From contig OZ199838.1 of assembly GCA_964304625.1 (NCBI GenBank), positions 9,327,245 through 9,391,244 of the forward strand: a stretch of DNA of 64,000 nt, written 5' to 3'. This DNA comes from Kudoa neothunni. Lineage: Eukaryota; Animalia; Cnidaria. Within the stretch, counting starts at the first letter, position 1. Every line of letters starts with the position of its first letter. Shown here one piece after another: positions 3,855 to 49,300 of the stretch. Below the pieces are notes generated by a model. The model saw only the letters and a program-made list of their open reading frames with translations, ran no database searches and was not told the origin of the DNA. Position numbers and translations under genes: made by a program.

Positions 3855-4624
3855 ATGCTTGGTATTAAGGCTGGGGGCAAAAAAGGGAAACTGATTCAGT
3901 ATATCAATTACCGTATGAGATGTACGCTACAGGATGGACGTATGTTCATCGGAACATTCATGGCTTTCGACACACACATGAACATTATATTCAGCGACTG
4001 TGACGAATTTAGGAGAGTTAAAACAAAATCAGAGTCCAACGCGGAAAAAGAAGAAAAACGAGTGATAGGTTTTGTTTTGATTCGTGGAGAAAATATCGTT
4101 TCGTTGACTGTGGAAGCCCCTCCTGCCCCAGACGTAAGTCTTCATCGGATGTTAGATTTTAATGCTAAGCTATCTTCTTTAGGACAAAGGAAAAGGCAAA
4201 ATTGCGACCGCCACACCTGGTATGGGAATGGGAAGAGCTGCCGGACGAGGTGTTCCTATGCCTGGTCAAGCGCCACCAGGTTTGGCCGGCCTTGGACGCG
4301 GTGTTGGTGTTCCTACGCCTCAGATTATGGCTCCAGGTGAGATTTCCTTATCACGTGGTGTATTTTCCTAACTGTGCTTTAGCGGCGAAAGTTCCTCCTG
4401 GAATGAGACCGCCAGGTTTTCCTGGTGTCCCTCCAATAGCAGGCATGCCACCTATGGCCGGCGTACCACCAGGTATGCCGATGCCTCCACCTGGAATGAG
4501 ACCACCTGGTTTTCCTGGAATGCCTCCTCCCGGATTTAATAGACGTATGATTATTGTTGTTGTGTTGGAATTCACTCTCCCTGATTATATGTATCTTTGT
4601 TTAGCTGGGCAACAACCTCAATGA
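3855..4624 (+). CDS. SNRPB: Small nuclear ribonucleoprotein SmB/B', 4 exons
   Basis: Sm fold [37 protein letters not shown]...[16 protein letters not shown]. Introns at 4134-4182, 4337-4382 and 4545-4604 give GMGRAAGRG and PPPGMRPP repeats, ending PGQQPQ*. Confidence 0.96.
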
Positions 4625-10609: not shown

Positions 10610-12861
10610 ATGCCTATTCGAAATAAAACTAGGAAAAATATATTACGCCGCGTGTCTTGGAGATTCAGCACCCAAAGCTCGCAAACAGATGTAGCTGTTA
10701 GACAAGAAATTCATGAGTATTACCCAGGACTGTTTTTCACCGGTAGTATCTTTCCAAAGGCCTTCAAAAATAACTACTTTTCATTGTTTCTACTGTGCGG
10801 ATTGATTGTTGGCCAAACCATGATTGTCAATGGTCTCTTGGTTATCACCATACCAATGTTGGAACGAAATTTTGGTTATTCAAGTGTGGAAACTGGCATC
10901 ATTAATAGTGTATATGATATCGCATTTGGAGTAAGTGCATTGATATCTGGAGTGATGGGCGGAAAAAGAAAACTATTTATTATCGGTATGGGGGGCTTAT
11001 TGATCACCCTGGGAAGTGTGTTATTCACCTTGCCAAATTTCTTGGTTAATTTCAAAGATCTGGTTCCCACTCTAAGCCGTATAAACAAGGAGAAACTTAA
11101 CCTGATAACTGACATATCACTGAGTGTGTGTCGAAATAGCACTTCAACAACCACTCCCTTGCAATGTGCAACCAACACGTCCGCGATTTATTTGACTATA
11201 TTTTGTATTGCATACAGTATGATAGGTAATCGATCAAAAAAATTAATTTTTTGATTTTATTTTTAAATTATATATTTTTGAGTTATCATCAATAAAGAAA
11301 TAAACTTAGGATTTGGTTCTGCACCTTTGCACACTTTGGCAATCGCATATTTTGATGAGAATCTCACATCGGAATCGAATGGAATCTATCTTGGAATATT
11401 TTACTTGTTCGGAGCCATTGGGCCTGCGATTGGCTTTGTTATGGGAAAGCCATTTCTATCCTTGCCTGTCACTCTGGATTACACCAACTATGCCGTTGTT
11501 TCACCGAACAGTAGAAATTGGATTGGAGCCTGGTGGCTTGGCTACTTGGTGGCCGCCACTATCGTTTTGATATTTGGATTTCTACTAATTATGTATCCTT
11601 CCAAGATACCACCACAAAAACCAACCGAAGCCACCTTTGATGATAATGTATTTATATCTAATGCATTAAAAGTGACAAGATTTGAAAATTTTGCAAACTA
11701 TTTTTCCAATTTTCGTTATCTATTTTCCAATTTTCCCTATATGGTAATGGTGTTGGCTTTCGCGTTGGAATCGATCCTCGTTCGTGGGATTGGCACTTTT
11801 CTAGCCAAAATCATACAAGTACAATTCAGAGTACCACCTCAAAATGTAAGAGTTTAATTTTTTGTCAGCCATAATGTGGCTTAGGCAAGTTTATATGCCG
11901 GGGGTTTGGTTGTAATTGGGATTGGGTTTGGCACCATTGCTGGAGGCGTAATCACCAAACTCAGAAAAGATACACCAAAAATCAAAAGTCTCATAATATT
12001 AATCATGTCATTTGTTATTGGTTGTTGTTATGCATCATTTTTTTTCGGCTGCGACAACGTGGAAATATCTGGCATTAAATTGGATGAATTGAAAATGTAT
12101 TTACAATAGCTACTACATGAGCAATTTTGAAACTAATTTGGTCTCATATTGTAGAGTGCATAAATTAGAGACAGCTTCTTGCAATGCGAATTGTCACTGT
12201 GATGTTAACAGGTATCAACCCGTTTGCGATGAAATCAACAAGTTGACTTTTTACAACCCGTGTGTTTCTGGGTGTGGCAACGTTACTGCCGAAACAGTAC
12301 ATAAATCTATCGGAAAGAACTTTTTTATACTTTTTCAATAGAAATTTACAAATTGTTCCTGTTTAGCGTCTCAGAATATTCAACTAGGACAGGGTGTTTG
12401 TGATGGTGATTGCAAATCTATTGTCTATTTTTTGGTAAGCGTTTTGGTAACATTATTCCTTCAATACCTCACCTACGTTCCACAACTCACGTTAATATTG
12501 GCGTAAGTTTTTGTTGTTGCGAATCCAGTTTGTGTAGTTTCTATCACAGATATCTGAATGAAAAAACCAAGAACCCTGGACTTGGATTACAACAAATTCT
12601 TGGAAGGATCGGCTACATTGCAGGACCATTCATATTTGGCTACATTATTGATTCGAGCTGTAGTATGTGGAGCATAAACGAATGCACACTCTCCACAGCC
12701 AACTGCTTAGAATATAACAATGAATCCATGAGGTATATCCAACGACTTATAATTATCCGAGTTTATGCTTTAGAATGAATATACCCATATACGCAATCCT
12801 GATCAGAATTTTTATCACACTGCTTCATTGTGCAGGATACGTGTTTACGAGTGAAGATTGA
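10610..12861 (+). CDS. SLCO: Organic anion transporting polypeptide (OATP/SLCO family), paralog A
   Basis: Signature WIGAWWLGYL. Also LERNFG...ETGII.S.YD, AYFDEN, IGPAIGF, a Kazal-like loop CNANCHCDVNRYQPVC and GPFIFGYIIDSSC..W...C.....C..YNN. ORF pieces join through short introns. Confidence 0.93.
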
Positions 12862-14156: not shown

Positions 14157-17100
14157 TCATTTCAGGCCGAGATTTTGTTGATGGTTCGAAAAAAATATTT
14201 GATAACATATATGACATTTTTAAAGTAAAATAAATCATGTGTAACATTTTGGAGTTTGATTGCGCTAAAACAAAAAAATTTCATGCATGATGCCATATGG
14301 CATCATTCGGCCGCCCCAAATTTGCAAAACCGTTAATGCACAAGCGGGGCGAAAAAAACCAAACAGAATATTGCTATTTATAAAGAAAGTAAAAAAATGA
14401 TGTTTTTGTATAGTTTTATTTTGTGTGATATTAAAACAACTTCTGCTAATGTTAAGGCACAGAGCGATGTTGCACGTTATGCAGTAAATCCTAGAATACA
14501 TTGAACAGTACTTGCATCTCTTTTTTTCATGTCTAGATTCTGGATAATAAAACACTCCATCGAAACGAGAATTTGGAGAAACCCACTTGCATCGGACGTT
14601 CGCTTGCGATTAGGAACACTTTGTTTGACGGTTACTTGGGTGGATGATGGCCTATCCCTTGTTGGCACACGTTCTATGTTTTGGCAGTAAAACATTAGGT
14701 GTTCACTTACCTCCAATGTAAGGTTTTGAAGATCCATAATCTTTTTACTGTCTATAGCCATTGGTTTACATTGCCTGTGATAAATGATCCATCCATTCAG
14801 TAAGCAGAGGTTTAGGCACCAACAAAATATTATGGTGTACCACTTTTTTGACTTATGATCTAATCGATACAATGTCATCAACATGTCGAACAAATCGACC
14901 CCCCCCCCATGTATTTATTATACATTTTTACAATTAGAGGATAACTGATATTTTGAACTTTTTTCTGTTTTTGTCGTATCTTTGTACAGCAGGAACTGAA
15001 AAATCAGAATAAAAAGTGGATGATATATTAACAATAGATTCATCTAGTCAGCGTACAACATTTATTTTGGAATTATCTAAACAATAGATTCCATATTCAA
15101 AACTTCCTCTAGGTTGATTATTAAACTCTTTTTCCGTTTTAAAAGGACACTTCTCCATGCGGGTTTTTCTTATGATGCTGGTAGAAAAGTAAACAAGCTC
15201 CAAAAGTTTGTTGTGCAAGTTAAAACTTTAAAAGTCATTATCATAGTATGTATGATATTTAGAACTATTCAAAGTTTCACACAGCTTCAACATTATGTCC
15301 GACGATTTATTCGCCGTAGGTGTTGTAACATTAAAGTAGTTCCAGATTCAAAGTAAAAATCATGGATAATTCCACCGGCACCGTTCCTCGTAAAAACTTT
15401 AAAGCCCATTTAGTAGGCTTCAGTGACAAATAATGTTTTAAGCCCGATTTACCTTTAAAGGAATAATTTTCTCATCGATGGACTGGTGGTATTCAGACTA
15501 GATAGTTAAGCAAGCCTGCCGTATTATGTCAAGAACAGGTCTTATCTAAAAAAACCTGTCTTAGACAACGTTATTAGGATTTAAAACAATATTGTTATTG
15601 TCGCAGAAACGTAAATACCTTAATAACGACTCGAATCTCTCTCTCGTCATTCTATCGGATATGGCGTTGTAATTAATTTTCGTTGACCAGTAATTCCAAC
15701 ATTGCGGCAATTTTACGATAGACATTCGAATAAGAATTACGATCAATAGCCGAATTTCCTCAATTGTAGTTTCAAATGACGAATTTAATGTTGACGCATA
15801 TTTATTTGTTTCATTCAAAATAAGTTCAAAACGGGCGTCAGTAAAAAATTGATTGAAATAATAAAATAGTTCAAAAATATCGCCATAAACCTCCATGAAA
15901 ATAGATTCTGATGCAGCTGAGTTACCACCATCACAAGATTCATTTAGAATACACTTGGGATCAACATCAAGAGTTACCGTATCATTCTCGCCTTCAGAGA
16001 AGTCGTCATCTCTGACAGAATTATTAAAAGTTTCAACATCCTACGCATTTTCAGCATCGGATTTGCCAGGATCTGGAAGTAGTATAAGCTGTTTCATCAT
16101 CCTCCCGATTTTGTTTTTTTAATAATAAAATCAGCATCCATCACCACCCTCTCACCTGTAATCAACCCCCGCCGAGTGATGCCATATGGCATCATTGTTG
16201 ATTTTTCATTTTGAGCCTTAAGGTTAGAATTTTCCAATATTTTATATCAAATTTGTAAAAATATTTTATTAGAATAATACAATAAATTTTTATCAGTGAG
16301 TAAAACAGTTTCTTCAGTCTTATAGTTATCGTTCGAAAGGGTCAGTTTTGCTGATCCCAACAACAAGTATTATTATGTACTAGCGCAAAAGCCCCGCTTC
16401 GCATGGGCTTCCTTGCCCAGCCAAGTAGACTACAGCCTTGAGTAGGCCAAGGTCATCCGAAGTTCAAAGTAAATTAAGAGTATTTAGATAAATAGTACAA
16501 AGATTACCCGATTAACGGATGATTTATTTAACTAATTGGACGCATGAACCTTATTTAATATTTTTAAAAACGAATAAACACTACTGAGCGTTTAAAATTT
16601 CCTCTTTAGAGCTCCTAAAAATCGATTTTCTCCTTGTTGTTTGCAGTTATCTCTAAATCATACCATATGAAGTGGACTAATCTTGTTAAACTTCAATAAA
16701 TGAATTTCAGATTAATTATTGGCTACATAACGTAATATTACCTTCTTTATTTGAACTTATTAAATTGTTAAATTACGTTTCAATAATTTTAAAGTACAAT
16801 AAACACTTTGGTACGTTTATAATTAACTTGTAAAACTTTAACAAAATGATCTATATGTTTGCATAAATCCTCTGATCATACCAATCATATCACGTAAAAA
16901 TGTTTTTAGTCATTTTTCAGAATGCAAACCTTTTATAATTTTTTACGTATTTTTCTGTGTTAAAATAAAATTTTATCTTTCCATCTGTGTGCTCAAATAG
17001 AGCATTATGTCTTTCTATAAAGAATGAAAAATGCGTACACACTGACACACACACGGATTATCGGTTTGTTTTATATAGTAGATTTTATACCATGAAAATA

Positions 17101-19500: not shown

Positions 19501-21813
19501 ATGGACAATGATGGAGTTGAAAATGTTTCAATTGCGACCGAATCGAACGTAAATGCTGCACATACAGATTCCGCAACAAATGAAGAATTGAATAAATTCT
19601 ATAAACCTCTATTTTTCAAAAAATGCTGTCTACCAAGATGGTGCCAAGGAATGATATTTGCATTAGTTTTGATGTGTCTTTCAATAATTGGCCAAGGAAT
19701 GGTTATCACAGGACAATTACCGATAACATTAACTATGTTGGAAAGAAATTTCGGTTTCACCAGTGTACAAACAGGCTCGATTCACAGTTTTTATGACGTA
19801 TTTTTCGGAATTGGAGCATTAACAGTGGGTATTCTGGCCAAAAAAAGAAAAATTTTCTCGGTTGGAGTTGGGGTGTTCATCATGTCGTTAGGTTGTTTTT
19901 TATTTACACTACCCAACTTCCTTCATAACTTTAACAAATTCAACTTTTCCGATAATGCATCTACGTCTAAAACCACCGGATATGAAATATGTAATCTGAA
20001 ACAAGTCAATCAAGAAACCAAAATGCCGCCCAGCAACTTTGGATACCTCGTAATATTCTGTCTAGGCTACTCATTAATTGGTAAATTAAACTTTAATACA
20101 CATGTGATTGTGTCTGTTTGTTGTAGGTTTCGGTGCTGCTCCCATGCACACATCTGCATTAGCTTATTTTGACGAAAACCTAACACCAGAAATGAATGGT
20201 CTGTACCTTGGAATATATTATCTGTTTGGCTCGATTGGACCAGCTATTGGTTTCGGTTTGGGTAAACCATTGTTATCGATACCCGTCAACCTAAACTTTG
20301 GGTCGTCTTCAATACTCACACCGGAAAATGAAAGTTGGATAGGAGCCTGGTGGTTGGGTTATATTATAGCAGGCTGCTTTCTAACAATCGATGGGATTTT
20401 TTTGGTGTCATACCCTTCAAGGATTGTTCGGCCGCTCAATGCTGACAATAAGAATGGTGGTGATAAGCAACCCAATAATAGTATCAGTGATCAAGACCAA
20501 CCGAAAATATCTAAAAAGAGCTACACATCCAAATTCAAGAGTGTTCTTGAATCATTTAAAACCCTTTTACTAAATACACCATATCTCTTCCTGGTACTAG
20601 GAATGTCAATGAAAGGAACCACATTAAATGGATTGGGGACATTTTTACCAAAGATTTTTGAGGTGCAATTGCGTGCTTCATCCACCCAAGTAATTCTAAA
20701 TCTTTTCCATACAATAATTAACCAACATAATGGTCTACAATGATATTTTAAGGCTAGCATGCTATCTGGAGTTCTGGCAGTAACAGGAGCTGCTCTTGGT
20801 TGCCTCTTAGGCGGCTTAATAATTAAGATAAAAGGTCACACCATCCAAAGTAGAGTTTTATTTGTGTTGGTCGTTAACACAATTGCAGCACTAACGTATT
20901 CCGCATTTTTCTTTGGATGTGACACTAGAAAATTTGGAAAACTTTATCTTGATGACAAACTTCAGTAAAATTATGTTTTTAGTTGTATGTTTTTATTATT
21001 AAAAACATTGGATAGGCTTACTGACAACTCAACTAAGTGTCAAATACCCTGTCACTGCAGACTTACCAGATATGAACCTGTGTGTGACGAGAGATCACAA
21101 ATAACGCATATTAGCCCTTGTTTAGCTGGTTGTCATGAAACATACGAAAAAGACAAAAAACACGTATAAATACTAAAATAACTAATATGAATAAAAATAA
21201 GCTTAGTACTTTACCAAATGTGACTGTCTTAATTCCCTAAATGAAATTGTTGTTCAGGGCGGATGTATTTCTCCATGCAACAGTCAAACAAAATTCATGG
21301 CTCTAGCATTTTTTTCATTGTTTTTAAGCTTTTTAGTATTTGTTCCGGAATTATCCATTATGCTCCAGTAATTAAATTATTTTATTTTTAAACTTGAGTA
21401 AGTAATTTTTTTGTTAATTTTGAAAATTAGATTGCTTTCTTATGATACCAAGACCTGGGGATTAGGGTTTCAACAAACGTTGACTCGCATCGGATTTATT
21501 ATCGGTCCCATATTGTATGGTTATTTGATAGACAGAACATGTATACTTTGGTCAAAAGATAATCAAAACTCAGGAGTATCATACTGTTTAGAATACAATA
21601 ACCCTTTAATGAGGTATTCAGCCAACAACGTTTTGAACATCTTAAATGAAATTTTTTAGGTTGTATCTATCGCTTTATTCTATCGGCATTGAACTTGTTT
21701 CGTCAATTATGTATGTCATTGTCTATATCATTTTACGCCTTTCTCCGAAGAAAAATTCTCATGAAGAAATTTCGGCAGATAAGGAAACGAATCATCAACC
21801 TAATGGGGAATAA
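19501..21813 (+). CDS. SLCO: OATP/SLCO transporter, paralog B
   Basis: WIGAWWLGYI, LERNFGF, AYFDENL, Kazal-like CQIPCHCRLTRYEPVC and IGPILYGYLIDRTCILW. Introns fall at the same positions as in paralog A. Confidence 0.93.
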
Positions 21814-23442: not shown

Positions 23443-24229
23443 TTAATCATTGGTAATTGTATGCTCGTCTCTAGTATTCAGACTAACATAATTTACCCCA
23501 CTGGAATTTTATAATTCTGAAAATTAAACATAAGTTTCAAAAATTAATAATTATTATTTTGTTTATAGATTTTTTATCGTTTTACACCTCTTAACTGAAC
23601 TATATATAACCCTTAATGAATAAAAATTCTTAACGGTTATAATTAATTGTTTTTTCTGTACTTTAACCTTCTAAGTAGTTGAAAAATTGCCACCCTCCAA
23701 ATAAAAATGAGGTAGAAATCTGCCCCACTTTTTTATTTGCTGAAATTATTTCAAATAAAAGTCAGCATTGACCAACAAAATATGAGGGAAATTCATCGAG
23801 TAACTTTTGAATAAATGACCAATTATTAAAGTTATATCCTGTATGTGCATGCGCATACTGATGTTACGTTTCCTTGGAGTATGATTGTATTTATAGGTGT
23901 ATTTGTGCATTTCTTTAGTGTTTATATTTAATTAAAATTCCATAATAGCTGCCAATTAATTTATCCTATTTAAAACAATGGAGTATAATAATGCGCAGAA
24001 AAAAAAACCCAAAAATTGTCAAACTGTTGAACAATTATATCATATGTTTTTGGATGCTCTCTACAATTCAGAATTAAGCAAAATGTACAAGGGCCATCAT
24101 ATTTTGAATAACTAATGTAACCAAACTCTTAAACAATACTTAACAATCCTATATTTGTGAACCACGTGTATGCTTAGTAATTGTGAATCCTTTGCGTAGT
24201 GCTTCAGCTGCAGCCGTCACATCTGGTAA

Positions 24230-24492
24230 CAGGGTTGTTGGATTAACCCATATTTTCAATCTGAAAAAATTTAATGGCTATGGTGACAATTTTCCAAAAT
24301 TCCATCGGTCTTTCATGCTTCTATCATTGGCCTCGAACTGGAATGAAATCGAGTGTGCGAGGCATATCTCCCTTCACCTTGATGAATCCGTGGTGGACCT
24401 TTTGGAAGCTGTTAACCTTAATATCTATGGTCCCACTAGAGAACACTTCGGCGGCATCATTGAGCTGCTTGAAAAAACCTATCGTCCAACTA
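24230..24492 (+). mobile_element. LTR-retrotransposon gag-like remnant, truncated by a Tigger insertion
   Basis: KFNGYGDNFPKFHRSFMLLSLASNWNEIECARHISLHL resembles the F.G..D.W..F...F...A.AN.W.......L...L pattern of Ty3/Gypsy capsid N-termini. Confidence 0.5.
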
Positions 24493-25881
24493 CAGCCGAA
24501 CCTGGGTATTGCGTAATTTGTTTTCCATTCCCGAAAAATTACGCAATAGGGAGATTTTTCGCAATACAGGATATTAGCACATGCGCGTTATGCACAAAAA
24601 ACAAAAATTTCTTAGGGTTTAAAATAACTGGTAATTTCAATTTGTTGGTCCGATTTTCGGATTATTTAAAATATGAACTCCATAACTGTGTGTTTTGAAA
24701 ATAATACTGTTGAGTTTTCTAACAAAAGTTTTCTGATTAAATTAATTGATCGTTTGAGTTCCGCAGTTGACACAAGCGCTTCATCTTTTACAAAAGTTGA
24801 ATCGAAATTTTCTTCAAATGTATCAACTGCATACGCTTCAGATAAAGCTATTGATTCCTCCTCATGTATTTTTCCCTCTTCTTCAACATTGTCGGTTTCG
24901 TCATATTTTTATCTAAAAATTAAAGTTAATAAACAGTTAAACAGTGTGACTAAATTTATAAAATTATTTTCAGAAAAATCTTGAGATAAGTTTTCACTAT
25001 CTATTACTTAATCTTTAATTTGATATATTGTAGTATCAAAGCACAATGTTAAAAAAGTCCAGATTTTCTAAATCATTTTTGAATTATAGTCGATGATACG
25101 TTTTCCCATGCATGATTTAAAGTTTTAATAAAACCAAAATGATACACTTAATTAAATTTGAATTATCCATATTTATTACGTTGTACTCTTTGTATCATAG
25201 TGAAATTTTTTAAAAATTAATTCCAAATCTATTTTTAAATTCGATAAATCAACCGTTACTACCGCTGAATTTGTAAATACTCATGGATTTACGATAATTT
25301 TTGTTTTTTCAACAATTAAGTAGACAGGAGCAACCTTCTTTTCATTTCGCATTTTAGTTATTCATGTATATAATAAATAAACAAACTCTGTGTGCATGTC
25401 TTCTTTTTTTTGAAGCCGAAATAATAGAATTAATAATATCATTTTGAGATGCTAAAATTCTATCAATTGTAGAATGCCTTGCAAATATATTATATTGACA
25501 TTCGATAATTTTATATTATTAGATGGCTTGGGAAGTTTAAAAGTCATTTCTTTTTCTCCTTTGGGTGATTTAAACGAATTATAATATTCGATTATTTCAA
25601 TTTTTTCAGCCATTGTTCGCTGATTCCTTACCATTTTTGTTTCGCAGAATTCAAAAAGAAGATTAATTGAGGATTAAACTGAACAAAATGTTACGCAGTA
25701 GCGAGATTTTAGTTTTTGCAGGCTATCTTAAATTTATACTTCTTTAATAACAACTTTTTATCTTTTTTTGCTCAGCTAACATTAATTTAAATAATATAAA
25801 AGCAAAGTTGGAGTAAAAAATTTAAAATATCTTTTATATTTCAATAAACTTGTGAAATTACGCAATATCCAGGTTCGACTG
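24493..25881 (-). mobile_element. pogo/Tigger deletion derivative
   Basis: 25-bp TIRs CAG(C/T)CGAACCTGG(G/A)TATTGCGTAATTT, TA on the left. HTH-psq-like start MVRNQRTMAEKIEIIEYY at 25634. Confidence 0.85.
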
Positions 25882-27823
25882 TGTACTGACAGTATAATTC
25901 GTTTTGTATAATAAATTAGCGGTGAATCATCCTTATAAATGAGAATAAAATTTTCATATAAATAAGTTTTTATTTTAAGGTAATGTCCAACTTAATAGCG
26001 ACAAAAATTAGTGCAAAGTATCTATCGAAAAACGTCATACCTGGGTTGAATTTTAGAGCGCAATATCCATTTCCTACTATTTTTAAATAATTAAAAAACG
26101 AGGTCACATACATGCCAGTTAGTTTAAAAGAATGACAGAAGACGACCACTGCGTAATAATAATTGTTGACTATGTTTACATGAATATTCAAAATATGGAC
26201 TTGATACGATATAGCAAATAATTAAGAATTTATAACTAATCTCCGAACCCAAACATCAGTCTCTCAGTGCTATTACTTAGCATGGTTATTGTGTGCTTTT
26301 AGAAATACTGTCAAAAATTTAATATATAAGAATTAATTATAGGTATAAATCATGAGATAAGAGTAAAATATATCAATAAAAATTATTAGAAAATTAGGAA
26401 AGAATTTTTTCGTGTGGAAAAATAGGAGTGCGTGCTTATTGCACAATTCATGGTTATTACGCACTTGAAATTTGTTCTTTTATTTTATTGGCAGGGCTAT
26501 TACGCATTGGAGTCTTTGTCCCAGAGAGTGCGTAGCATCCCTGCACAACCGTAGTTAAAAATACTTGTACCTTTTTCAAAAAAAGATTGCAACTCTCAAT
26601 CAAATAATACTTAATTGGGAATTATCAAAGTTCTCAGGTCACTAAAAAAAGATCAGCTTCCTTAATTAGAATTTTTATTTTTTTCATGGTCAGCAGTCTA
26701 ATCAAATTAACCATATTGGATATGTGCGAGAATAGACAACATATCACATTTAGATACTAAAAAATAAAAATTATCATTAGAAGGGACGAAATTTCCATAA
26801 TTCACAAGTATTATTAATTAAGCTATTTGGAAATGAGATCATCTTATTTAGATTCCATCCTCAATATTACTTAAACCAAGCTTAATTTATTTAACATTGG
26901 GAATTTAGAGCACCCCAAATTCATCTAATTTGTGTGGTATACAACTTAAGTTGTCAAAAAAATATCTGGGCACATTTTACGTTATTTCCTATGTTAAAAA
27001 TGTCAAAATTTTGCAATAAATTTTCACGATTTTATTCGTTCTTATAGATTCCATTAAGGAGATTAAATAGAGATCAATAAAATTAACAATGTAGAAACTT
27101 ACGAATTAATCAAATAGAAATAACTCTAAAATGTTTTTACGATTTCAATAATTTCGTTACTCATTGTGATTGGACCAATTTTGGGTCTTATTATATAAGG
27201 GTCTAATAAAGTTAATCTTGTAGAGGAAATACAGCCTTGAAAAATTATTCAGACTCAAGTTCTGAAGAGATTAGTAAAAATACTAATGATCATAGTTTAG
27301 CTTACGTTGAATTCAAACGTTTGAAGAGTTTTTAACCATTATATGTAAGCTAGTCAGTGAAGGTGTAAATCAATCTTCTTAAATATTAATAACTAATTAT
27401 GCAAGGCTAAGAGATGAAATAATTATATTTTTTGTTGACCTAATATAATAAATTCTATATTTATTATTTGAGAAAAATATTTATTCACGAGAAATAATTT
27501 TAATTTTTCGACTCGACGCTCTAATGAAATGATTTAATTTAAAAATTATATGTAATTGTTTCTCATTAAATATATACATATATATAAATTTAGTTTATTT
27601 AAATGATAAACAAAACAATTTTACAAATTTGAATAATCTGATAATATCTTAAAATAAAAAGATAATTAAGGCTTATCGATAAGACCCTGGTGTGACCAAA
27701 GTCTAAGGAATCTGAATATCTAAGCACCACCAGTCCACTTCAAAATAATACAATAGCTTCACGAATTTCGAAAAAATAAAATAAACCAAGCGCAAAAATT
27801 AATTTGGAATATTGGAACAAAAA

Positions 27824-29631
27824 ATGTCAGATACGTTATCAGCTGAAAATTACTCCACATCTGGTGAAATTAAATATGTATTCATTGTTAGCGGAATGTG
27901 GTCACAGCTTAGATTTGCTATTATAGAATATAGTTTTGACACTCTATATCACAACAATGACCTACAAATTTTTTGCCATAGGGAGATCTAATTCGATTTC
28001 AACTAAATTCGAAGGACAATGCGATGGAGCCTCTATCTACCTTGATTGTGATATGGGCTTCAAAAAAAATAAGTTTATGTTTTTAATTTTAGCGGAAAAA
28101 CGTATCAAAGAACTTGAGAATGAATGTTTAGAAAAGATAATTTCGGAGAATGCTATCAATGACAATGTGTTGTTGAATCATACAGAAATAAATATTTATT
28201 ATACACCGGAATATTTAAGTTTCCAAAAGTATTCTATTAATATTTCCACATACATTCTATTTAATTTCTCTGAATAGACACGTTAAATTCGGCACAAAAA
28301 GTGAAACTAGAAACATTAAAAGATCAAACCGACAAATAACCGTCAACGTGCATCGAATAGACCACTTGGAATACCTTGCTTATTTTGTTACTCGATATGA
28401 ATATGATGTATTTGATAATAGATAAATAATTTGATAAAATAATTATTGGTTTCATAAAACTTTTAGGGCAATATTGTCATGCTCTTTGAAAAATATTCAT
28501 TATTTCTGGGGCATGCAGCGATGATAGACTACTACGATCCCGAGCAAAACTCGAAAAAATTTCGCCAACAACAATACTTGGTAAATGTATACGGAAGAGC
28601 TTTGAATTGTTTAGGATATGACACTATATTTGCAAGACTTTCGCATCACTTACTATATGTATTTAAACTGTTTTCACATTCGTTTGACGTAAATCTACAT
28701 CGATCTAGAATTATACTAAACATCATCCCCAGTTCACACCTGATAACGATTTAATAATTATTGAACATCCTTGTCTGAAATTCAATCAAGTTTTGAACTT
28801 AACCTACAAAGATATTGATTCTATTTGTGTATCTAACACTAACTACTTAACCCACATAAAAAATAAACAATCTCTGGTAATAACATATGTCGGAAGTTAT
28901 TCATTTGATAGATGTATTGATTTGATGAAAAATACGTTACACATTCGAGACAGCAATGATCCATGGAAGGAATTCGCTTTGAGTAACTATAAAAATGTCT
29001 TCAAAGCAACCAATGCCACAGACGTTACCGTAGTTAACTTATTATAACATAAAATTTCACATTTATTTTTTTGATTGATCCAATGCAGATCTTTTCAAAT
29101 GAAAGATATAATGTGTATGTTGACGGTCCTAAGTCATATTATAAAAGAGTTCTAAGAAAATGTTCCCAGCTTAATCGCGAAACAAATGTGGTATTTTTAT
29201 GTTCAATAACTACATACGATTATTTTTCAACAAAGGAATGTCTCAAAAAAATGTATCTAGCCTCGATGTTAATTATTTTATCCAGTTATTCAAATGAATC
29301 GTTAAAATACAAAATTCAGGTATTTTTTCCATGTTAAAGTAACTGTTGTGATTTATAATACGTAGAGTTTACACGGATTTGCGAGCGAAGATTACTTTCA
29401 AATGAAACAGAAAAACTATGATCGCCTCCAAGACATCTCACGGCTTCAACATACTGCATACCTTGAACACTATATTCCTGTGGGAAGTAACTTTACTTAA
29501 TTTGATAAATATTAAAAAATGATTAAGAATATTTGGGAATAACCTTCAGTCTTATAATTTCAGTTGGCTTTCTAACAATAGCTCTTTGGAGACTAAAAGA
29601 CAAACGCGACCTAAGACTTAAACTCAAATAA
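27824..29631 (+). CDS. GDA1/CD39 (NTPDase/ecto-apyrase)-fold membrane protein with degenerate apyrase-conserved regions, about 9 exons and about 470 aa
   Basis: Exons 27824-27877, 27927-28228, 28278-28407, 28467-28658, 28709-29029, 29089-29252, 29286-29319, 29366-29486 and 29528-29631 splice into one open frame (exon 1 least certain). NSKKFRQQQYLVNVYGRALNCLGYD, IIEHPCLKF..LNLTYKDIDSICV and YVGSYSFDRC follow the CD39 register. C-terminal TM LGITFSLIISVGFLTIALW. Confidence 0.72.
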
Positions 29632-35949: not shown

Positions 35950-38409
35950 CTCGTAAACGATTTTAGACCAGAAACTTTCTGTTTTAATCTTTAATTGACT
36001 TCTAGATTCAAATGGAATAATTCCAAATATATCTTTTATCCAATCAGCAATATTTGAAATAGAGCCATTTTCTTCAGCTCATCTATTAAAATATTTAATG
36101 GACAATGAGATATATTGTAATTATCTGAATCAATTTTTATTATTGAGTTTATTTTTTGTTCTGTTTCATAACTTTTAGTTTCTTTTAAGAAACTGGTGAT
36201 TGCAGAATAGTGATCTTTTATGTGTTTTAAACAGTTAAAGAAACTACACCATGGTATGTCCAAAATACGAGGAATTTCCTTCTTTGTTTGAAAGTTATTT
36301 TAAGGAGAACCCAAAACCTCCTTTTATAATTACTATTTTTTGATAAAAAGGCGGAAAACCTTTTTATATCGGAAAAGTATTCATTTGTAGCTTTTTGACC
36401 TGCCAAATGAATAATGTGTGAAAAACATGGATTTCTAATGATAGCTGTATACATGACCCTCTAATTCTTAAAATACTTGTTCATGTACTGTACTGAGTCA
36501 GAAACAATCGCAATGCATTTATCCCATTTTAAGTCGTACTAATTTGGTACACTAGATATGTGACCAGCTATGATTACGGATTTGCATTTAACAGACCCCG
36601 AAGAATCAAGTATTATAACTCCTCGTTTACCGGTAAAACAAAAATGAAAAGAAGCTAATGTATTGAAAATCGGCCTATTTTTCGAATCAGGGGACTCACC
36701 AATGATTAAACTAAATCGTTCATCCATCATCACGGATTTAATGTTATCGACACCTTGTAATACAACCGAAAGATGTTTATCAATCAATGTGTCCCCATCT
36801 GGCAAGGAATTCGACACTGGGCAATGCTTAGAAGAGAACCCCCTCAAGTTACTCTTTTTATTAATTGCATCAAATGGAAGACCATCAACAATTACAATCT
36901 TCACCAAATCGATTTCAATATCACTTAATTTCCATCTGTTGAGATTTAGAATATTTTTTAATGGTATTGTTTTAGAAACATTTGACTTTATTGACAAATG
37001 TTTCTGTGAACTGAAATGTTCTTGAATTTTGTTTTGTTTAGGCGGCAACAGAAACTTGCAATATTTACAAGATAAAGAATCGTCCACAGCCTCTAAATCA
37101 ACCCACGACGCTAAATAATCCTTTATATATATAAAAGAGGACTGTCGGTATGTTTGTGTGTGTATGCCCCTAAGTACGCATGTGCGGACAATTTTTTTCT
37201 TATAGAGAGTCATATATAAAATTTTTATAAATTTGTGATATTTACAAAAGTCGTATAATTGTTTTCGGATGACTATAATTTCCAAAAAGTATTTATGAAA
37301 TAGTGATTTTGTCGATTTAAAGTTTGTTTATCGGATTACATAAGTTCAACTATAGGATTAGCGCTTGCTTATTTCGTGGTGATGGTCGGTTAAAATTAAC
37401 TATCTCCCTTATATACTCTATCATATATTAATTGAATGATGCCATCTGTCTTTACGTATAAGATTTGTGCGTTTATTTTATTGTTTGCTCAAATAAATTC
37501 CTTATATGGGGAGTTTTAATGTAATTGACTTGATAAACACATTTTGAAGGCTCTATTAGTGGATTTAGATACGAAAAAATGTCAATATATGCATTATTAT
37601 TGAGTTGGTTATACGTGTTATAATCAGATAGATTGAAGCACTATAACGCAAGTACCGTGTCCGTAGATTTCATTGAAACCGTCCGTTATGTTGAACTTTC
37701 AGTGATTCAATTCAGTGCAGATGGTTGTACGGTTATTTCATCCGATTATTTAAAATATTTGCTAGAAAAAGCGCATTAAGGTTTTTGCGAACAAAACGAT
37801 ATTAATTTTAGCAATATCAATTAATTTTCATACGTTTTCTTCTATCTCCTATTACTTTCTCCATTTTTTATCTCTTTAAAAGATAGTGGTACACACAGTT
37901 ATTGAGCGGGACCAGAATCCGACTTTTAAAAATCCTGCGGCCAAAAAACAACGTTTTAGATAACACTTTAACGGGATTTAAATAATTCGGGAATGAAAAA
38001 AATAGGATGCTGACCTTAACTTATTTAGCGTTGGTGCCGAGCCACGAAATTTCAAATGAACGCCAGGATTGGAACACACCTTCAAAGAAATGAACATAAT
38101 TTAAATTTCATAATTCAAATCGTTAAAGTATATTGTTTAAAAATTTTTAGTTATTTTGCATCTATGGGTTTTAGGCTTTAATATATTTTTCGAATATTGT
38201 TAAGAAACGTATCTATGCGAAATCTTCCCTAAACAACGCTGGGCAGTTCCCGCTAGTTAGTAATATCACGTCGCTTCCTACCCATTTTAATTCGATGTTG
38301 ACGTGTTAAAATCGTTTTTTACCGATCAAAAAAAATAAACGTCGAACGATTTTTTAAAATTCGACGGTTTAATCGATCGAAATCGATTTTAGTCGAAACC
38401 CGCAACCCT
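35950..38409 (-). mobile_element. hAT transposon 5' part (ATG 38285), split by a Helitron
   Basis: CKYC...H....KH zinc-finger-like motif, FSLIIGESPD, VSDSVQYM, PCFSHIIHL. Terminus AGGGTTGCGGGTTTCG at about 38408. Confidence 0.75.
37119..38256 (+). mobile_element. Non-autonomous Helitron
   Basis: 5' end A|TCCTTTATATATATAAAAGAGG plus a GT-repeat. 3' end is a degenerate hairpin CAACGCTGGG followed by CTAG|T. Removing it restores the hAT reading frame. Confidence 0.85.
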
Positions 38410-39062: not shown

Positions 39063-41611
39063 ATGTCCTCCCAAAAGCATACAGTTGTTGATGAAAACCG
39101 TAATTGTAATGATGATTGGACTCGAAAATATTTTTTCATCTATTCGTTGAATAAAGCGATGTGTTTGCTTTGTCTCGAATCAGTCGCCATATTAAAGGAA
39201 TATAACTTGAAACGACATCACGAAACGAAACATGGGGAATTCAGTGAAAAAATCAACAATAACAACAGGGAACAGACGGCCTTAAAATACCTTGAAAGTT
39301 ATCAAACGCAACTCGGTTCATTCAAAACGAAATCTCTAACCCAAGAAAACGAATCAGAAACAAGTTTTATGATATTATATAGCATTGCTCTGTGAAACAA
39401 ACCATTTTTAGATGGCGAATTTGTGAAAGAATGTATAATGGATTGTGTTAACGTTATTTTCCCGGAATTGAAAAAAAAGTTTGAAAATATTCTATTATCA
39501 AGAAGTACAGTTGTGCGTCGTATAGAAATGATAAGTGAAAATTTAAGCCAAAAATTAAAAGATATAAGCAAAGATTTTGTGTGTTATTCATTAGCATTAG
39601 ATGAAAGCACAGATATTAGAGACACTGCACAATTGCTTATTTTTGAACGCGGAATAAACCCTAATTTTTGTATCACTGAAGAGTTACTTTATATGGAACC
39701 GATGGAAGGTACAACAACTGGGCAGGATTTGTTTGAATGTGTGGTTAAATCATTTGAAAACAATGAATTACCTTGGAGTAAATTAACAAGTGTAACAACT
39801 GATGGAGCTCGCTCTTTATTGGGAACGATTTAACTATTAAATGAAAAGTTTAAAAAAGAGATTCCCAACCATGCTTTTCCGTCATTTCATTGCATTTTGC
39901 ATCAAGGAAGTTTGTGTAAATCTGCATTAAGTTTACACCACATTGTAACTCCAGTTGTGAACGCAATAAACATCATTCGTTCAAGAGCTCTGAATCACCT
40001 TCAGATCAGATCGTTGTTAAATGACCTTGATTCTGAGTATGGACATGTTATCTACCATAACAATGTACGATGATTGAGTTTAGGAAAAGATTTGAATAGT
40101 GAGTTTATCCATAATATAAACTGTGATGAATGGAGGTTTGAGCTTATGTTCGCAGTTGACTTCTTTGAAATCTCAACGAATTAAACCTAAAGTTGCAAGG
40201 TAAACAATTCATGGTTTATGAAATGTTCAACCACATTAAATCTTTTGAAGCGGAATTATCTCTTTTTATAAACCAAATAAATGAAGGGAAATTTACTCAC
40301 GTTCCATCGCTTGCAAAAGAAAAAAATGCCTCCAGCTATTGGTTTTAAAATAGAAAGCCATCTAAAATCTTTATTAGATGAGTTGAATAGAAGATTTAAA
40401 ACTTCCGACAGGTTGAACCAAAATTTCAAATACTCACATCGTTATTCTCTATTTATGCCAACACGACTGCCGACTAGCTTCAGCTTGAACTGATAGATGT
40501 TCAATTTGATAGTTTATTAAAAGAATTGTTTGTTGTTGTTCCATTAGTATAATTTTACAATTAATTACCTGCTAAGAGTTTTCCATGCCTTAGAAATTTC
40601 GTTACAGAAATATTTTCCATGTTTGGGTCAACCTATATTTGTATTTGTGAGAAAAGTTTCTCCTGTATGAAAATTAATAAAAACAAGAATAAGTCTTTGC
40701 TGTCAAACAAAAACCTAGGGACCGTGCTCAGGATATCTTCAAGCAACCTAAAACCGAACCTTAAGCTATTAGTTCATAAAAATATTTAATAATTTTTTTC
40801 CTTTTAATTTCCGTTTTATCAAGCGTCCCAAGTGCAACACTAATCACTTCAGAGTTGAAGTCTTACGGTAAATATAATTTTTACTAATTGATATAATTAG
40901 AGGAAGTTGAAAGAAATAATAAAAAGTAGGAAATAATAAGTTATGTTAACTCTTCCTGGTGGAATTATTATTACAAAAAATATATTCATAAAACCTTAAA
41001 AGATGAATGTTACATCGATACTTACCGAAAATTAAGATTTTTTTAATTTCATGTAATTTTAATCATAATTTAGGATTGTAATATTCCCTAATAAATTTTT
41101 CTAAAATTATTTCTGTAATTTGATTATATTTGTCACAAAAAATTTAATGTAATCTGAAATATTAAAAATCCAATTAATTTTTATTAATTGGATTATACTC
41201 AAATTTATAGTTTAGGTCTTATTTTAAAGTACATGTTATATTGAATTTGATGCTTAAAATAATTATAAATAATTGTATCAGTGTCATTTTTTAAATATTT
41301 CATGTGTAGTTAATGAGTAACATTAACTTTTCATGACTTTAGTTATAATTAAAATTTATTAAGTATTAAACCTATTATTTCGATCGTAACTTGCAATAGT
41401 ATGCCGATCACAAAATTTCTATATTTAAAACAAATATTTAATTCTTTTTTAAATGAACTTATACACTAACTCGTTTATTGTACAAAAAGTGTTAGAAGAA
41501 CCATCAATAGGTATTTAAGCTCTCATAAAGCATTTAATCAACAATGCGGTCCTCCAAGTTTCTGTGATGAGCCAATGTGGCCCGCGAATCCAAAAGTTAT
41601 GCCCACCACTG
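39063..41611 (+). mobile_element. SPIN/GTF2IRD2-like (Buster-type) hAT element with a decayed transposase (39063 to about 40790)
   Basis: CLLCLESVAILKEYNLKRHHETKH, YSLALDESTDIRDTAQL, VTTDGA, FHCILHQ and FGSTY. 3' terminus GTGGCCCGCG...TTATGCCCACCACTG at 41611. The left TIR was not found. Confidence 0.9.
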
Positions 41612-44619: not shown

Positions 44620-46844
44620 ATGTCAGATGGTGTTGATGCGGATAATGAAAATACCAACTTTTGGACGCGATGCTGCAACAATATTACCATCATACTAATG
44701 TTGGTGTGTATGTTGATCACCGCACAGAGTTTAGTTGTTACTGGTTTATTGATATTGACGATCCCTACCGTTCAAAAATTATTCGGATATTCCAGTTACC
44801 AAATGTCATTCGTGGTGAGTGTTTACAACATCTTTTTTGGTGTTTGTTCAGTGGCGGCAGGTTACAAAACATTGAAAAGAAAACTACTATGGATAGGAGT
44901 TGGTGGGGTGTTGATGTGTTTGGGATGCTTTGTTGCTATTCTTCCGCACAAAATAAGTCTTCACGATTCCAGTCTTTTATCTTCTTATCAAGTGACGAAT
45001 AATGAAACATTCCAGATGTGTAACAAGAACCAACCGTCCAAAATTACCTATTTTCAAGATTGCATACCAACCTCATTAAAATATTTGATAGTTTTCTGTT
45101 GTTCGTATGCATTACTAGGTAGCTTTTTGAGGCGTAATACATTAGAGATATCGCTTGGTTGTAAAATTTTAGGGGTGGGATCCGCTCTGTTACACACATT
45201 AACAGTAGTGTATTTCGATGAGAAATTGTCTCCAACCAAAAGTGGGATATACATTGCAATATTTAATATTTTCGGGGTGATTGGCCCTGCGATTGGTTTT
45301 GGTATTGGCTATTTGTTTATCCGAATGCCAGTCAATCTTAAAATGGATCCAGTCAACGACGTTGGTATGACACCCGATAGTGAAGGTTGGATTGGTGCTT
45401 GGTGGCCAGGCTATGGAATTAGTGGGTTGATCTTAGTTATTCTTTCTCTATTAACAATACTTGTTTGTTTTAAATCACATATCAAAAACTATAATCATAC
45501 CAGCCAAAACAGTACGTTAATCGGAGATGTGCTATCGATTTGATATAAATTTTTAGCCCCCACTGGTGAAATTCAAAACAACTGTGAAAATATTGTACAA
45601 AACCAACAAACCCTTACCTCAGAGCAAACCATCTATCTATATGTTATGCTGTCTATCAAAAAATGTTTAAACAGATTTAAATTGTGTCTTTCCAATATTC
45701 CCCTCATGTGTGTAATAATTGGCGCTACATTGGAAGTTATTCCGTTGAATGGGTTTGTTATATATACGGCAATAATTTTGGAAGCACAATTCAGAGTAGA
45801 TGTTAATAAGGTTAAGAGGAATTATCAATGAATTTCTTTATTATATTATAGATTGGTCTTATTACAGGCTCTTTGTCGATGTTGTCTGCGACCGTTGGAT
45901 TTATATGTGGGTCTTTATTTAACAAGTATGTCAAGTCTCAAAAAAATAAATTGCTTGGGGCTATTTTTGTTTCTATTGTCACAATTTGTCTGTTCTTTGT
46001 TGTATTTTACGGATGTGCAAGTAGAACTATAGTGGGTGTTGAAACGGATGAAAAAAACATGTAGCAACGGTTTAACAAACAAAATTTTGCTATATTACAT
46101 TTATGTAGAGTGGTACCAGCTTCAACCCAATTATGCAATTCAGGCTGCAACTGTAACTTTTTTCGGTATGAACCACTATGTTACAACGGAAAAACATATT
46201 TCAATCCTTGCACAGCGGGATGTGAAAAGAAACATGCTAGTTCTACTAATGAAGTGGTAATAACTATATATATGTGTATAAAGTTTCTTATTTTATTTTA
46301 AAGATTTTTACAAAATGTAAATGTTTCAAACACCTATCAGAAAATATAAAGGAAGGAGGATGTATTGATGAGACCTGTAAGAATATTTACCTATTTTTGC
46401 CCGTATTATTCTTTGCTCTGTCCTTCACGATATTTCTCTATATCCCTCTTTTAACGTATAATCTATCGTATGGGTTTATATAATGTCTTCCGTTTGATAA
46501 TGTATAATAGGATTTTGAAGGAAAATCAGAAAAGTTTTGGAGTGGGTCTACAACTGTTTTTTATTAGAATTGGTTATATTATTGGACCCAATCTGTACGG
46601 GGCTTTGATTGACAAAAGTTGCGTTTTGTGGTTGCCTGGAGAGTGCAGAGATTCCACTGGAAATTGTGCAGAGTATGATAATCGAAAAATGAGGTCTATT
46701 TTATTTCTTCACTACAAATGATTAATAGTGCTTTGTAGTTTGTATCTGGTAGTGTGTTCCATTTGTTTCAAAATTGGCGCCACATTTCTTTACGTTTTGG
46801 CATATTTCGCTCATAAGAGTCATTACGAAAAGTACCTTGAATAG
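44620..46844 (+). CDS. SLCO: OATP/SLCO transporter, paralog C
   Basis: WIGAWWPGY, VYFDEKL, IGPAIGF, Kazal-like CNSGCNCNFFRYEPLC and IGPNLYGALIDKSCVLW. Shares introns with A and B and has one extra at about 45512-45556. Confidence 0.92.
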
Positions 46845-47221: not shown

Positions 47222-48074
47222 TCACAATTTTTTTCGGACTCCGAAGTGACATAACTCTCGTCCTCTCTGTCTGAATTTATACTTGAGGAGAGTGGCAGCG
47301 ATTGGGAGGTTGTGGGAAGTCTTTTTTTTCGGTTGACAAAATTTGAGCCGACCAAAGAAATTTTGAAAACGTGCCCAAACAGGAACACCACATTGGATAT
47401 TGAGCCCATTTTTTAGGTTGTTTACATTAGGAAGGTAACTGTTACACAATTTTTCCATTACCAGATTGAACACACACTCAACGTCATGACCAATGCGATT
47501 CGAAGCAAACATCAGATCACATCCTTTCGATTGTGCATATTCGTAAACCTCGCCTGTAAAATTCTCACTCTTATCTTCTAATAAGAGATCGGTCTAAAAT
47601 TAAATTAAATATTGTTGTGATTAACACAATCAAAAAACTTAAGTTATTTGCGGGAATAAATTTAAAAAATTAAAATCAAACCCACATAACTACACCTCCA
47701 CACTATAAACATACCTTACAACCGACGATAACTTTAACAGCCTTTTCATCGCATACTTTTCGCACCTCCGGCATCCAAAAATCCAAATCCTCAAAAGTTT
47801 TTTTGTCGTTCACATCATACACCAATATAACTGCATTAGCATCACTGCAACATGCTTCCAAATAGCTCACCATCGAATGATTTCCTGAGGTATCCCATAT
47901 ACAAAGTTTGTAGTGTGTTTTTTTGTGGTAGATGTTTTTTATCACAAAATTAGCGGTGTAGGTGGGCGCTTGGTCAGAAACAAATTGTCCCTCACAGTAT
48001 TTGGTTACCATAGAGGTTTTGCCAACATTTCTATTTCCAACAAGAACAACTTTAAACAGCGAACAGGTTGACAT
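47222..48074 (-). CDS. Atypical Rab-like small GTPase, 2 exons (intron 47594-47714)
   Basis: FKVVLVGNRNVGKTS (G1), KLCIWDTSGN (G3), VILVYDVN, spliced VGCKTDL (G4) and FASNR (G5). Confidence 0.85.
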
Positions 48075-49300
48075 TAACACCCGAAAGGTAAATAATCCAC
48101 TTAAGCTAAAAATTCCATTCAACCAATCGTAAAGCTATGCGATATCTTACAAAAATATATTGAAAAATTGTTTCCTCGATTCTCCAAATAATCCAATCTA
48201 CTCATACTCATCCAATTATCTCAGTTCTACTCCAAATCTCATCCCGATATTTTTGGTATAGTATTCTCTCTAAACACCTTATTGTCAACCAATATTTATA
48301 TTTCGTCTTATGCGGTCGACGGACACAAACAACCACCAACAAAAATCGGCCAAATAAACATGATTAAATATATTTTTTTAAAAATCTTGCGCAAAGTTTC
48401 TCTCAGCTTCTGCCAAAAATGTTATAAGATATTCATCCAGGAAACTCAATTAATAATATTTAAATAGTTTAATTTAAAAAAGTGCTATTAATGAGGTTGG
48501 TTTCCATCTAGATCAACCATAATAGAATGTGTTAATAATTTGTTGAAAAATGATATAATTCCGTAAAATATGTATAATCTCTTCAAGGTTTACCGAGTTT
48601 GGTACTCACTGCTTCCGTTCGTTAATTACCTGTTTTCTAATTGTTAACATTCGGAATCCGTTAGAAATTATGTAGTGAGAAAAAAAATAAAAATTGGCAG
48701 CTTATTCTCTTCATTGTTTTCGTAAATTTGATGCTTAATTTCATCGCCATTAAGACTGCCCCCGACACAAAATCTTATTTTGGGACATTGATACGTAATG
48801 CCTACTGTGGTTTTAACGCTCAGGTCGCATGATCATAATTCTATAAAGATTAACGAATCCTTCTAATGTATTAGTTTCTTTAAATTAATAAATAAGAACG
48901 GAAATTTTTTAAGTATACTCGTAAGCGCAGTAACGGCCCAGATATTGCGTGTACCATTTACTGGGAATTAACGACACACGTCGAATCTATGTGCGCTTGC
49001 GTGATCCTACCAATTCATTTAGATTAAAAATATGATAATTTTTTTATTTTTCCTTTTTAATTATATTATATAATGGTTCAAAAATTTAGCCGTATACTAA
49101 AGGGATTATTCGACATTAGCTAATGGTCAATTTTATTAAATGACTTTAATTTTATCAATTCAAACTATTGGTTATCGAAATATGAATTTAAACTTTGTTC
49201 ATTTTTGAGAAAATCTAATTATTTAAGCTACCATAATCTGATTTATTGTGGTGAATATATCAAAATCTTCCACATTACAACGTGGTCGATTAATATTTAA

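What the first reader, a model, noticed from the sequence alone, without database searches (positions are those of the whole stretch)
27824..29631. Intact CD39/NTPDase-fold membrane protein with all apyrase motifs degenerate (candidate ecto-pseudoenzyme)
Seen: four anonymous ORF fragments plus small exons splice into one stop-free gene of about 470 aa. It has a hydrophobic N-terminal stretch, a C-terminal TM, N-glycosylation sequons (NHT, NLT, NAT) and CD39-like cysteine spacing (NVYGRALNCLGYD, EHPCL, DSICV, FDRC, RKCSQ, FLCS). Established: GDA1/CD39 catalysis needs ACR1 DAGS, ACR2 ATAGMR, ACR3 E, ACR4 DxGGxS and ACR5 W. The equivalent positions here read DCDMG, YTPEY, HLEYLAY and LFEKYS, and there is no GWTLG. 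Inference: the scaffold is retained without phosphate-binding loops, so it may act as a surface decoy, nucleotide sensor, adhesin or partner of an active NTPDase.
Basis: partly seen in the sequence, partly recalled or inferred. Interest (0 to 1): 0.8.

Follow-up and report, generated by a model that had tools for sequence, protein, structure and literature searches.

The report
Dead-apyrase surface gene, Kudoa parasite
This gene of a tuna-muscle parasite (almost certainly Kudoa neothunni) encodes a membrane protein built on the scaffold of the ATP-splitting enzyme CD39/apyrase but lacking every catalytic motif, and it is one outlying copy, with an uncertain front end, of an undescribed family of at least 37 such genes that probably coat the parasite and bind rather than cut.

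Summary
The gene is real. A spliced, stop-free frame of 469 aa (484 if one 45-nt intron is kept) runs 27824-29631. The genome matches Kudoa neothunni (40.2 Mb, three chromosomes). Sequence searches miss the NTPDase link, but it is well supported: the exon 28467-28658 model has rat NTPDase2/1 as its top seven Foldseek hits; the next exon aligns to the following NTPDase1 segment; six introns match in phase, and four in anchored position, a motif-intact NTPDase of the same genome. All five apyrase motifs are gone. Corrections: DCDMG is not ACR1 (it sits on a splice donor); there is no N-terminal TM or signal peptide, so 'ecto' is unproven for this copy; the first 160 nt have rival readings, one of them broken; no RNA test was possible. 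It is not a lone gene but an outlier of a family of at least 37 copies (19 within 200 kb), mostly signal peptide + dead NTPDase domain + acidic stalk + TM. Best reading: non-catalytic surface or binding protein, like inactive trans-sialidases. No paper found describes it; this scan already found the family on other DNA of this genome.

The parts
27824..27877 (+). First coding stretch from ATG (18 aa, NYS sequon, ends KY). No signal peptide or TM; the sister gene L008 has a TM just upstream of the equivalent stretch.
27878..27981 (+). Ambiguous region holding the ACR1 hairpin. Reading A: exon continues to 27932 (ACR1 site SGMWSQ, 27890-27907), intron 27933-27981 with weak donor. Reading E: intron 27878-27926 (strong donor, phase 0, family position), ACR1 site LYITTM 27942-27959. 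Both give the same length. A frame or splice break here is not excluded. No DxG in any reading.
27982..28047 (+). Exon part common to readings A and E; first Cys (C50), resembles the second half of family exon b
   Evidence: P 0.02, weak
28048..28092 (+).
28093..28228 (+). Exon c: ENEC cysteine, NHT sequon, ACR2 site YTPEY (28200-28214); phase-2 intron follows as in L003
   Evidence: (held-out family profile P 1.5e-7)
28278..28407 (+). Exon d: ACR3 site HLEYLAY (28363-28383); the catalytic Glu position reads Tyr
   Evidence: register by eye against L001, L003
28467..28658 (+). Exon e: ACR4 site LFEKYS (28482-28499), CLGYD; folds like NTPDase1 residues 207-270; ends 16 codons after the Cys exactly as in L003
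28709..29029 (+). Exon f: HPC, SIC and DRC cysteines (first and third invariant in the family); aligns to NTPDase1 268-330
29089..29319 (+). Exon g: starts IFSNERY; three Cys
29366..29486 (+). Exon h: ACR5 site SEDYFQM (29384-29404), no Trp; very short stalk
29528..29631 (+). Last exon: TM helix (29530-29589), basic 13-aa tail, TAA

Best explanation
The gene descends by duplication from a cell-surface CD39-type NTPDase of Kudoa (the motif-intact gene L003 has the same exon plan and a signal peptide plus C-terminal TM). It kept the two-lobed, disulfide-stapled, glycosylated scaffold and lost the metal- and phosphate-binding loops and the catalytic Glu, so it cannot hydrolyse ATP or ADP by the known mechanism. 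The scaffold was amplified to at least 37 genes; typical members are type I membrane proteins that hold the dead domain on an acidic Ser/Thr-rich stalk with a tail too short to signal. The most likely job is a non-catalytic surface coat or adhesin in which the remodelled cleft binds a host or self ligand, with paralogs giving a varied surface. Shown: ancestry of the second lobe, motif loss, copy number, architecture, purifying selection among paralogs. Inferred: fold of the first lobe, inactivity, surface location, binding. This copy is an outlier (sister to L008), has almost no stalk, keeps more CD39-like cysteines, and is probably still coding, with an unrecognised upstream exon supplying its signal.
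For: Foldseek of the exon-e model (pLDDT 85.6): ranks 1-7 of 350,542 chains are rat NTPDase2/1, prob 0.89-0.98, 21-24% identity; VIA aligns it to NTPDase1 207-270; first Atlas row is GDA1_CD39. Exon-f model: CD39 has the best TM and probability in its Foldseek list and is the only VIA hit, 268-330, collinear. Intron phases 1,2,0,0,0,0 equal those of L003 (P about 0.004), four anchored within 0-2 codons. Held-out profiles: family exon f to L003 exon F P 4.5e-5; family c, e, f to window exons 1.5e-7, 6e-5, 3.6e-14. No ACR motif in about 20 members read. 34 loci match both exon profiles, 37 match exon e at E<1e-5. Signal, stalk and TM in cluster genes. dN/dS 0.28-0.57 among older pairs. Relatives in two marine metagenome contigs, at most 42% identical to any G000 copy.
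Against: No single search is significant by its own cut-off (Foldseek E 0.095-0.24; VIA Z 2.0-2.2; hhalign P 0.02-0.045); Pfam, PDB sequence and Atlas feature searches are blank. Only two exons (about 170 aa) were folded. No RNA, no assay, no localisation. This copy has no signal peptide and an unresolved 5' end. No ligand is indicated.
Confidence: 0.55

Rival explanations
1. The family is as described, but this copy is recently disabled at its 5' end (signal exon lost, frame or donor broken within 27878-27988) and is on its way to a pseudogene.
For: No signal or TM in frame or within 3 kb upstream, though L003, L008 and the cluster genes have one. Both candidate first introns look coding (GC 0.37 and 0.33 against an intron mean of 0.20). 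The frame-2 read-through shares YSFDT with sister gene L008, and L008's exon length (103 nt) points to a place in the window with no canonical donor (alignment P 0.07, weak). Transposon remnants lie upstream (24144-24695).
Against: About 395 downstream codons over seven exons are unbroken with strong donors; two intact 5' readings exist, one at the family's intron position with a strong donor; an acceptor at 27841-27842 scores within the range of real ones, so a distant first exon is possible.
Confidence: 0.27
2. The dead domain still binds a nucleoside or nucleotide and acts as a sponge, sensor or uptake aid for host purines.
For: By eye, this copy keeps a CxGxD and an FSNxxY stretch at the places where human NTPDase8 has the ribose contacts Asp250 and Asn354 (residue numbers from PMC12489842; the register is from my own knowledge, not tested). 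The parasite lives in ATP-rich muscle.
Against: These residues are not kept in the cluster genes; both phosphate loops carry bulky or acidic residues; one ligand would not need 37 divergent copies (median 38% identity); the tail is too short to signal.
Confidence: 0.1
3. It is a non-catalytic subunit that oligomerises with, traffics or regulates one of the two motif-intact NTPDases.
For: L001 and L003 keep ACR1-5; CD39-type enzymes oligomerise (own knowledge).
Against: Copy number, long variable stalks and rapid divergence fit a host-facing role better than a partner of one enzyme.
Confidence: 0.04
4. The protein is an enzyme with a new active site, or the NTPDase likeness is limited to the second lobe or is a chance fit.
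For: The first lobe was not folded; sequence support is marginal.
Against: No invariant polar residue at ACR positions across the family; the only invariant residues in exon f are two Cys; intron phases match over both lobes.
Confidence: 0.04

Closest known systems
Cell-surface E-NTPDases, GDA1/CD39 family (NTPDase1/CD39, NTPDase2; PF01150; PDB 3ZX0, 4BR2)
   Same: Second-lobe fold, cysteine spacing, exon plan shared with the genome's own motif-intact member L003, glycosylation sequons, C-terminal TM.
   Different: All five ACRs replaced; no N-terminal TM; expanded to at least 37 genes; most members add an acidic stalk.
mt-PCPH, the inactive ENTPD5 oncoprotein (PMC3829800, PMC4090452)
   Same: Catalytically inactive protein of the NTPDase family; the only such case the paper search returned.
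   Different: It is a 27-kDa frameshift truncation of one gene, not a full-length scaffold with replaced motifs kept as a gene family.
Inactive trans-sialidases of Trypanosoma cruzi (PMC5504189, PMC3198458)
   Same: Works-like model: a parasite surface enzyme multiplied into a polymorphic family whose inactive members bind rather than catalyse.
   Different: Unrelated fold; binding is shown there and not here; family far larger.
Parasite ecto-NTPDases with adhesion roles (T. cruzi TcNTPDase-1; PMC8630654)
   Same: Shows that the NTPDase scaffold can serve host-cell adhesion.
   Different: Single-copy and catalytically active.
Sphaerospora molnari variable surface proteins (bioRxiv 10.64898/2026.02.11.705288)
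   Same: Duplicated membrane-protein families in a myxozoan, proposed for immune evasion.
   Different: VSP, RIFIN and ETRAMP-like; the paper does not mention NTPDase, apyrase, CD39 or GDA1.

Membership tests
GDA1/CD39 superfamily (descent) | NTPDase fold | tested here: met
   Second lobe only: exon e top hits NTPDase2/1, exon f collinear, Atlas. Each is below formal significance; first lobe not folded.
GDA1/CD39 superfamily (descent) | Shared exon plan with a bona fide member | tested here: met
   Six intron phases equal those of L003, four anchored within 0-2 codons.
GDA1/CD39 superfamily (descent) | PF01150 score over cut-off | tested here: inconclusive
   No exon hits, but exons of motif-intact L003 also fail (best E 0.078); the joined protein was not searched.
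Active E-NTPDase | ACR1 DxG | tested here: not met
   SGMWSQ or LYITTM by reading; no DxG motif in any frame.
Active E-NTPDase | ACR2 TAGMR | tested here: not met
   YTPEY, anchored by the phase-2 intron.
Active E-NTPDase | ACR3 catalytic Glu | tested here: not met
   HLEYLAY: a Glu sits one place before, the catalytic place reads Tyr; register by eye against L001 and L003, so one-residue doubt remains.
Active E-NTPDase | ACR4 DxGGxS | tested here: not met
   LFEKYS in the exon aligned to NTPDase1 207-270.
Active E-NTPDase | ACR5 GWTLG | tested here: not met
   SEDYFQM.
Active E-NTPDase | NTP/NDP hydrolysis | not testable with these tools
   Needs an assay.
Cell-surface (ecto) NTPDase topology | N-terminal TM or signal peptide | tested here: not met
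   None in this copy; present in paralogs and L003.
Pseudoenzyme (as opposed to pseudogene) | Intact, expressed, under purifying selection | tested here: inconclusive
   Family dN/dS 0.28-0.57; no close relative or RNA for this copy; 5' end ambiguous.
Variant surface antigen family | Many divergent, clustered type I membrane paralogs | tested here: met
   At least 37 copies, 19 in 200 kb, median 38% identity.
Variant surface antigen family | Diversifying selection | tested here: inconclusive
   Youngest pair: 18 replaced and 5 silent codons in two patches, 2.3% exonic against 0.5% intronic differences; fits gene conversion as well as selection.
Variant surface antigen family | Switching, mutually exclusive expression | not testable with these tools
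   No parasite RNA available.

The most novel reading that the evidence does not exclude
Kudoa has turned the CD39 ecto-enzyme scaffold into a family of about 40 expressed, non-catalytic surface receptors whose rebuilt clefts bind different host ligands or form a switching surface coat: the first pseudoenzyme radiation of the GDA1/CD39 family, and in an animal parasite.
Probability: 0.3. Interest if true: 0.85.

Novelty: new variant of a known kind. Interest (0 to 1): 0.57.

Why it matters
Parasites are thought to keep ecto-NTPDases for their activity (clearing the danger signal ATP). Here the scaffold is kept and multiplied without the chemistry, next to two intact enzymes. No full-length dead GDA1/CD39 family turned up in the paper searches, and 37 or more genes are about 0.7% of the 5,316 predicted proteins of this reduced genome (PMC12239612). 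It gives concrete surface candidates for how Kudoa persists in fish muscle, and explains a block of myxozoan orphan genes that sequence searches cannot name. The weight lies in the family; this copy alone is an outlier with an uncertain start.

Tried and rejected
Blank or uninformative: Pfam on all window exons and on L008, L018 exons; PDB sequence searches with single exons and with profiles A1, A2; word search with A1; Atlas feature searches; pairwise exon-to-exon scores against L003; wide VIA search of exon f; own-genome searches with the two 5' frames. RNA: two runs of the host species held no parasite reads, so this is no test. Rejected: bacterial-style ORF reading or an alternative genetic code (ordinary GT-AG introns explain the stops); DCDMG as ACR1; an N-terminal TM; Sphaerospora molnari as source (40.17 Mb but 40 contigs); a 20-nt intron at 28073-28092 (leads to a stop); positive selection from the first dN/dS of 7 for the youngest pair, which fell to about 1 with proper exon ends; the hydrophobic stretch at 27130-27195 as a signal exon (stops on both sides, no start or acceptor). 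Left out by the operators' rule: any search or fold of the joined protein; exons were searched one by one by reference, and joined only inside scripts to count stops, length, cysteines and codon changes. Human ENTPD1 intron positions could not be checked in a paper.

Full report
Source. The window lies on contig 1 of a 40,260,978-base assembly in four contigs, about 30% GC, with introns of about 50 nt. This fits the published Kudoa neothunni assembly from yellowfin tuna muscle: 40.2 Mb, three chromosomes plus a mitochondrion, median intron 49 bp, GC 30.4%, 5,316 predicted proteins, too little parasite RNA for annotation (PMC12239612).

Observation. Splicing at GT-AG sites gives a stop-free frame from 27824 to 29631. 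From 28093 on the model is firm: seven exons, six strong GTA donors scored with a model trained on other genes, one TM and a basic 13-residue tail. A 45-nt in-frame stretch, 28048-28092, is AT-rich and lies near the family's phase-1 intron; spliced out, the protein has 469 aa and 9 Cys. The N-terminal hydrophobic stretch is the ACR1 hairpin, not an anchor (KD19 at most 1.2).

The 5' end is open. Reading A uses intron 27933-27981 (weak donor, position new to the family). Reading E uses intron 27878-27926 (strong donor, phase 0, the position of intron 1 in L003, L008 and the cluster genes). Both introns are 49 nt, so both give 469 aa. Both are more GC-rich than most real introns and score as coding-like. 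The frame-2 read-through shares YSFDT with the sister gene L008, and L008's exon length points to a place in the window without a canonical donor (weak). A break in 27878-27988 is therefore not excluded. No reading has a DxG, and none has a signal peptide; no convincing signal exon was found within 3 kb upstream. DNA contigs agree with the assembly; the RNA runs held no parasite reads.

Family. The exon 28709-29029 found 12 paralogs. Profiles of that exon and of the one before it find 34 loci with both and 37 with exon e at E below 1e-5, plus about nine weak ones. Nineteen genes lie in 200 kb of contig 1 with the same exon order. Most have a signal peptide, an acidic Ser/Thr-rich stalk of about 30-340 residues, one TM and a short basic tail. 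Median identity is 38%; dN/dS among older pairs is 0.28-0.57. The youngest pair differs in two patches, 18 replaced against 5 silent codons, which fits gene conversion or selection. Profiles built without the window gene recover its exons c, e and f in order. On an exon-f tree it is sister to L008 (95/91) and far from the cluster. Among 1.84 billion proteins the profile finds one hit, from two short metagenome contigs that carry the same exon plan and are at most 42% identical to any copy here; so the family exists in at least one other, unnamed organism.

Ancestry. PF01150 finds two genes with intact motifs in this genome: L001, an ENTPD4-like gene, and L003, with signal peptide, ACR1-5 and a C-terminal TM. 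Direct sequence tests of the window exons fail, but so do most exons of L003 against Pfam. Three other lines agree. First, the AlphaFold model of exon e (pLDDT 85.6) has rat NTPDase2 and NTPDase1 at ranks 1-7 of 350,542 chains, probability 0.89-0.98, E 0.095-0.24; VIA places it on NTPDase1 207-270 (Z 2.0), and the first Atlas row is GDA1_CD39. Second, the exon-f model (pLDDT 73) lists CD39 at rank 15 with the best TM-score and probability of its list, and NTPDase1 268-330 is the only VIA hit among 481 chains, directly following exon e. Third, six introns have the phases of L003's (1,2,0,0,0,0; P about 0.004), one exactly 16 codons after the shared Cys and three more within two codons of shared anchors; from my own knowledge, unverified here, these are also the intron positions of human ENTPD1. 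The held-out exon-f profile matches L003 exon F at P 4.5e-5. No single score is decisive; together I put descent from a CD39-type NTPDase at about 0.93.

Catalysis. Productive NTPDase complexes need the Asp of the DxG motifs of ACR1 and ACR4 for the metal, and ACR1-5 for the phosphates (PMC12489842; PMC8630654). All five sites are replaced here, and no motif survives in any frame of the window gene, the 200-kb cluster, L006, L008, L016 or L018. The ACR positions are not conserved among paralogs either, which argues against a new shared active site. Inactivity is an inference; no assay exists.

Mechanism. A dead enzyme domain on a glycosylated stalk, with one TM and a short tail, in 37 or more divergent copies, most resembles the inactive trans-sialidases of Trypanosoma cruzi, which bind rather than catalyse (PMC5504189, PMC3198458). 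An active parasite NTPDase also has a reported adhesion role (PMC8630654). I read the family as a non-catalytic surface coat or adhesin set (0.55 including this copy being live). Rivals: this copy is disabled at its 5' end (0.27); residual nucleoside binding (0.10); partner of an active enzyme (0.04); new enzyme or partial likeness (0.04).

Novelty. Paper searches found no NTPDase or apyrase work on Kudoa or myxozoans and, as inactive family member, only the truncated mt-PCPH; most subscription journals are not covered. It works like known parasite pseudoenzyme families and descends from GDA1/CD39, but it fails every catalytic membership test, so it is filed as a new variant, not as an NTPDase. 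This scan had already noted the family at several other places of this genome; those notes are not evidence, and the tests above are my own.

Limits. The first lobe was not folded.

Noticed in passing
window 10610-12778, 19501-21810, 44620-45543: Three OATP/SLCO organic-anion transporter genes in one 64-kb window (PF03137 for the first; the others by sequence likeness): a local expansion.
   Followed up: partly
window 3855-4624: snRNP SmB-like gene (LSM domain) with a PPPGMRPP-type tail; the two ORFs overlap in different frames, so a short intron or a frame break lies near 4200-4340.
   Followed up: partly
window 24144-24908: Remnant that looks like a retrotransposon gag-type ORF about 3 kb upstream of the gene; no Pfam hit. 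Could lie inside a long first intron.
   Followed up: partly
window 14477-15896, 36539-37285, 39063-39833, 61823-62320: Several DNA-transposon remnants (piggyBac-like, hAT-like by eye; MULE/DDE hit for the last).
   Followed up: no
window 47703-48122 (-): Ras/Rab-family GTPase.
   Followed up: no
L003 (G000:C1:884130-887228, -): Motif-intact but very divergent CD39-type NTPDase with signal peptide and one C-terminal TM, nine exons; likely parent type of the family. ACR2 reads GTGGLR.
   Followed up: yes
L010:2251-3231, L007:2247-3032: Stalks made of tandem repeats (7-aa units in L010, about 21-aa units in L007) whose copy number differs between near-identical paralogs.
   Followed up: no
G000:C1:16202642-16204538: One cluster copy has about 1.4 kb between exons e and f instead of about 50 nt, probably an insertion in the intron.
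   Followed up: no
L034:1632-1637 (G000:C1:16291632): Exon c of this paralog appears to end at a GC donor (GCAATA); unverified.
   Followed up: no
L039, L040 (ENA ERZ28624939, ERZ4740346): Two metagenome contigs carry the same family member: exon f identical, exon e differs by four residues near its start; probably an unrecorded Kudoa-like myxozoan in those samples.
   Followed up: partly
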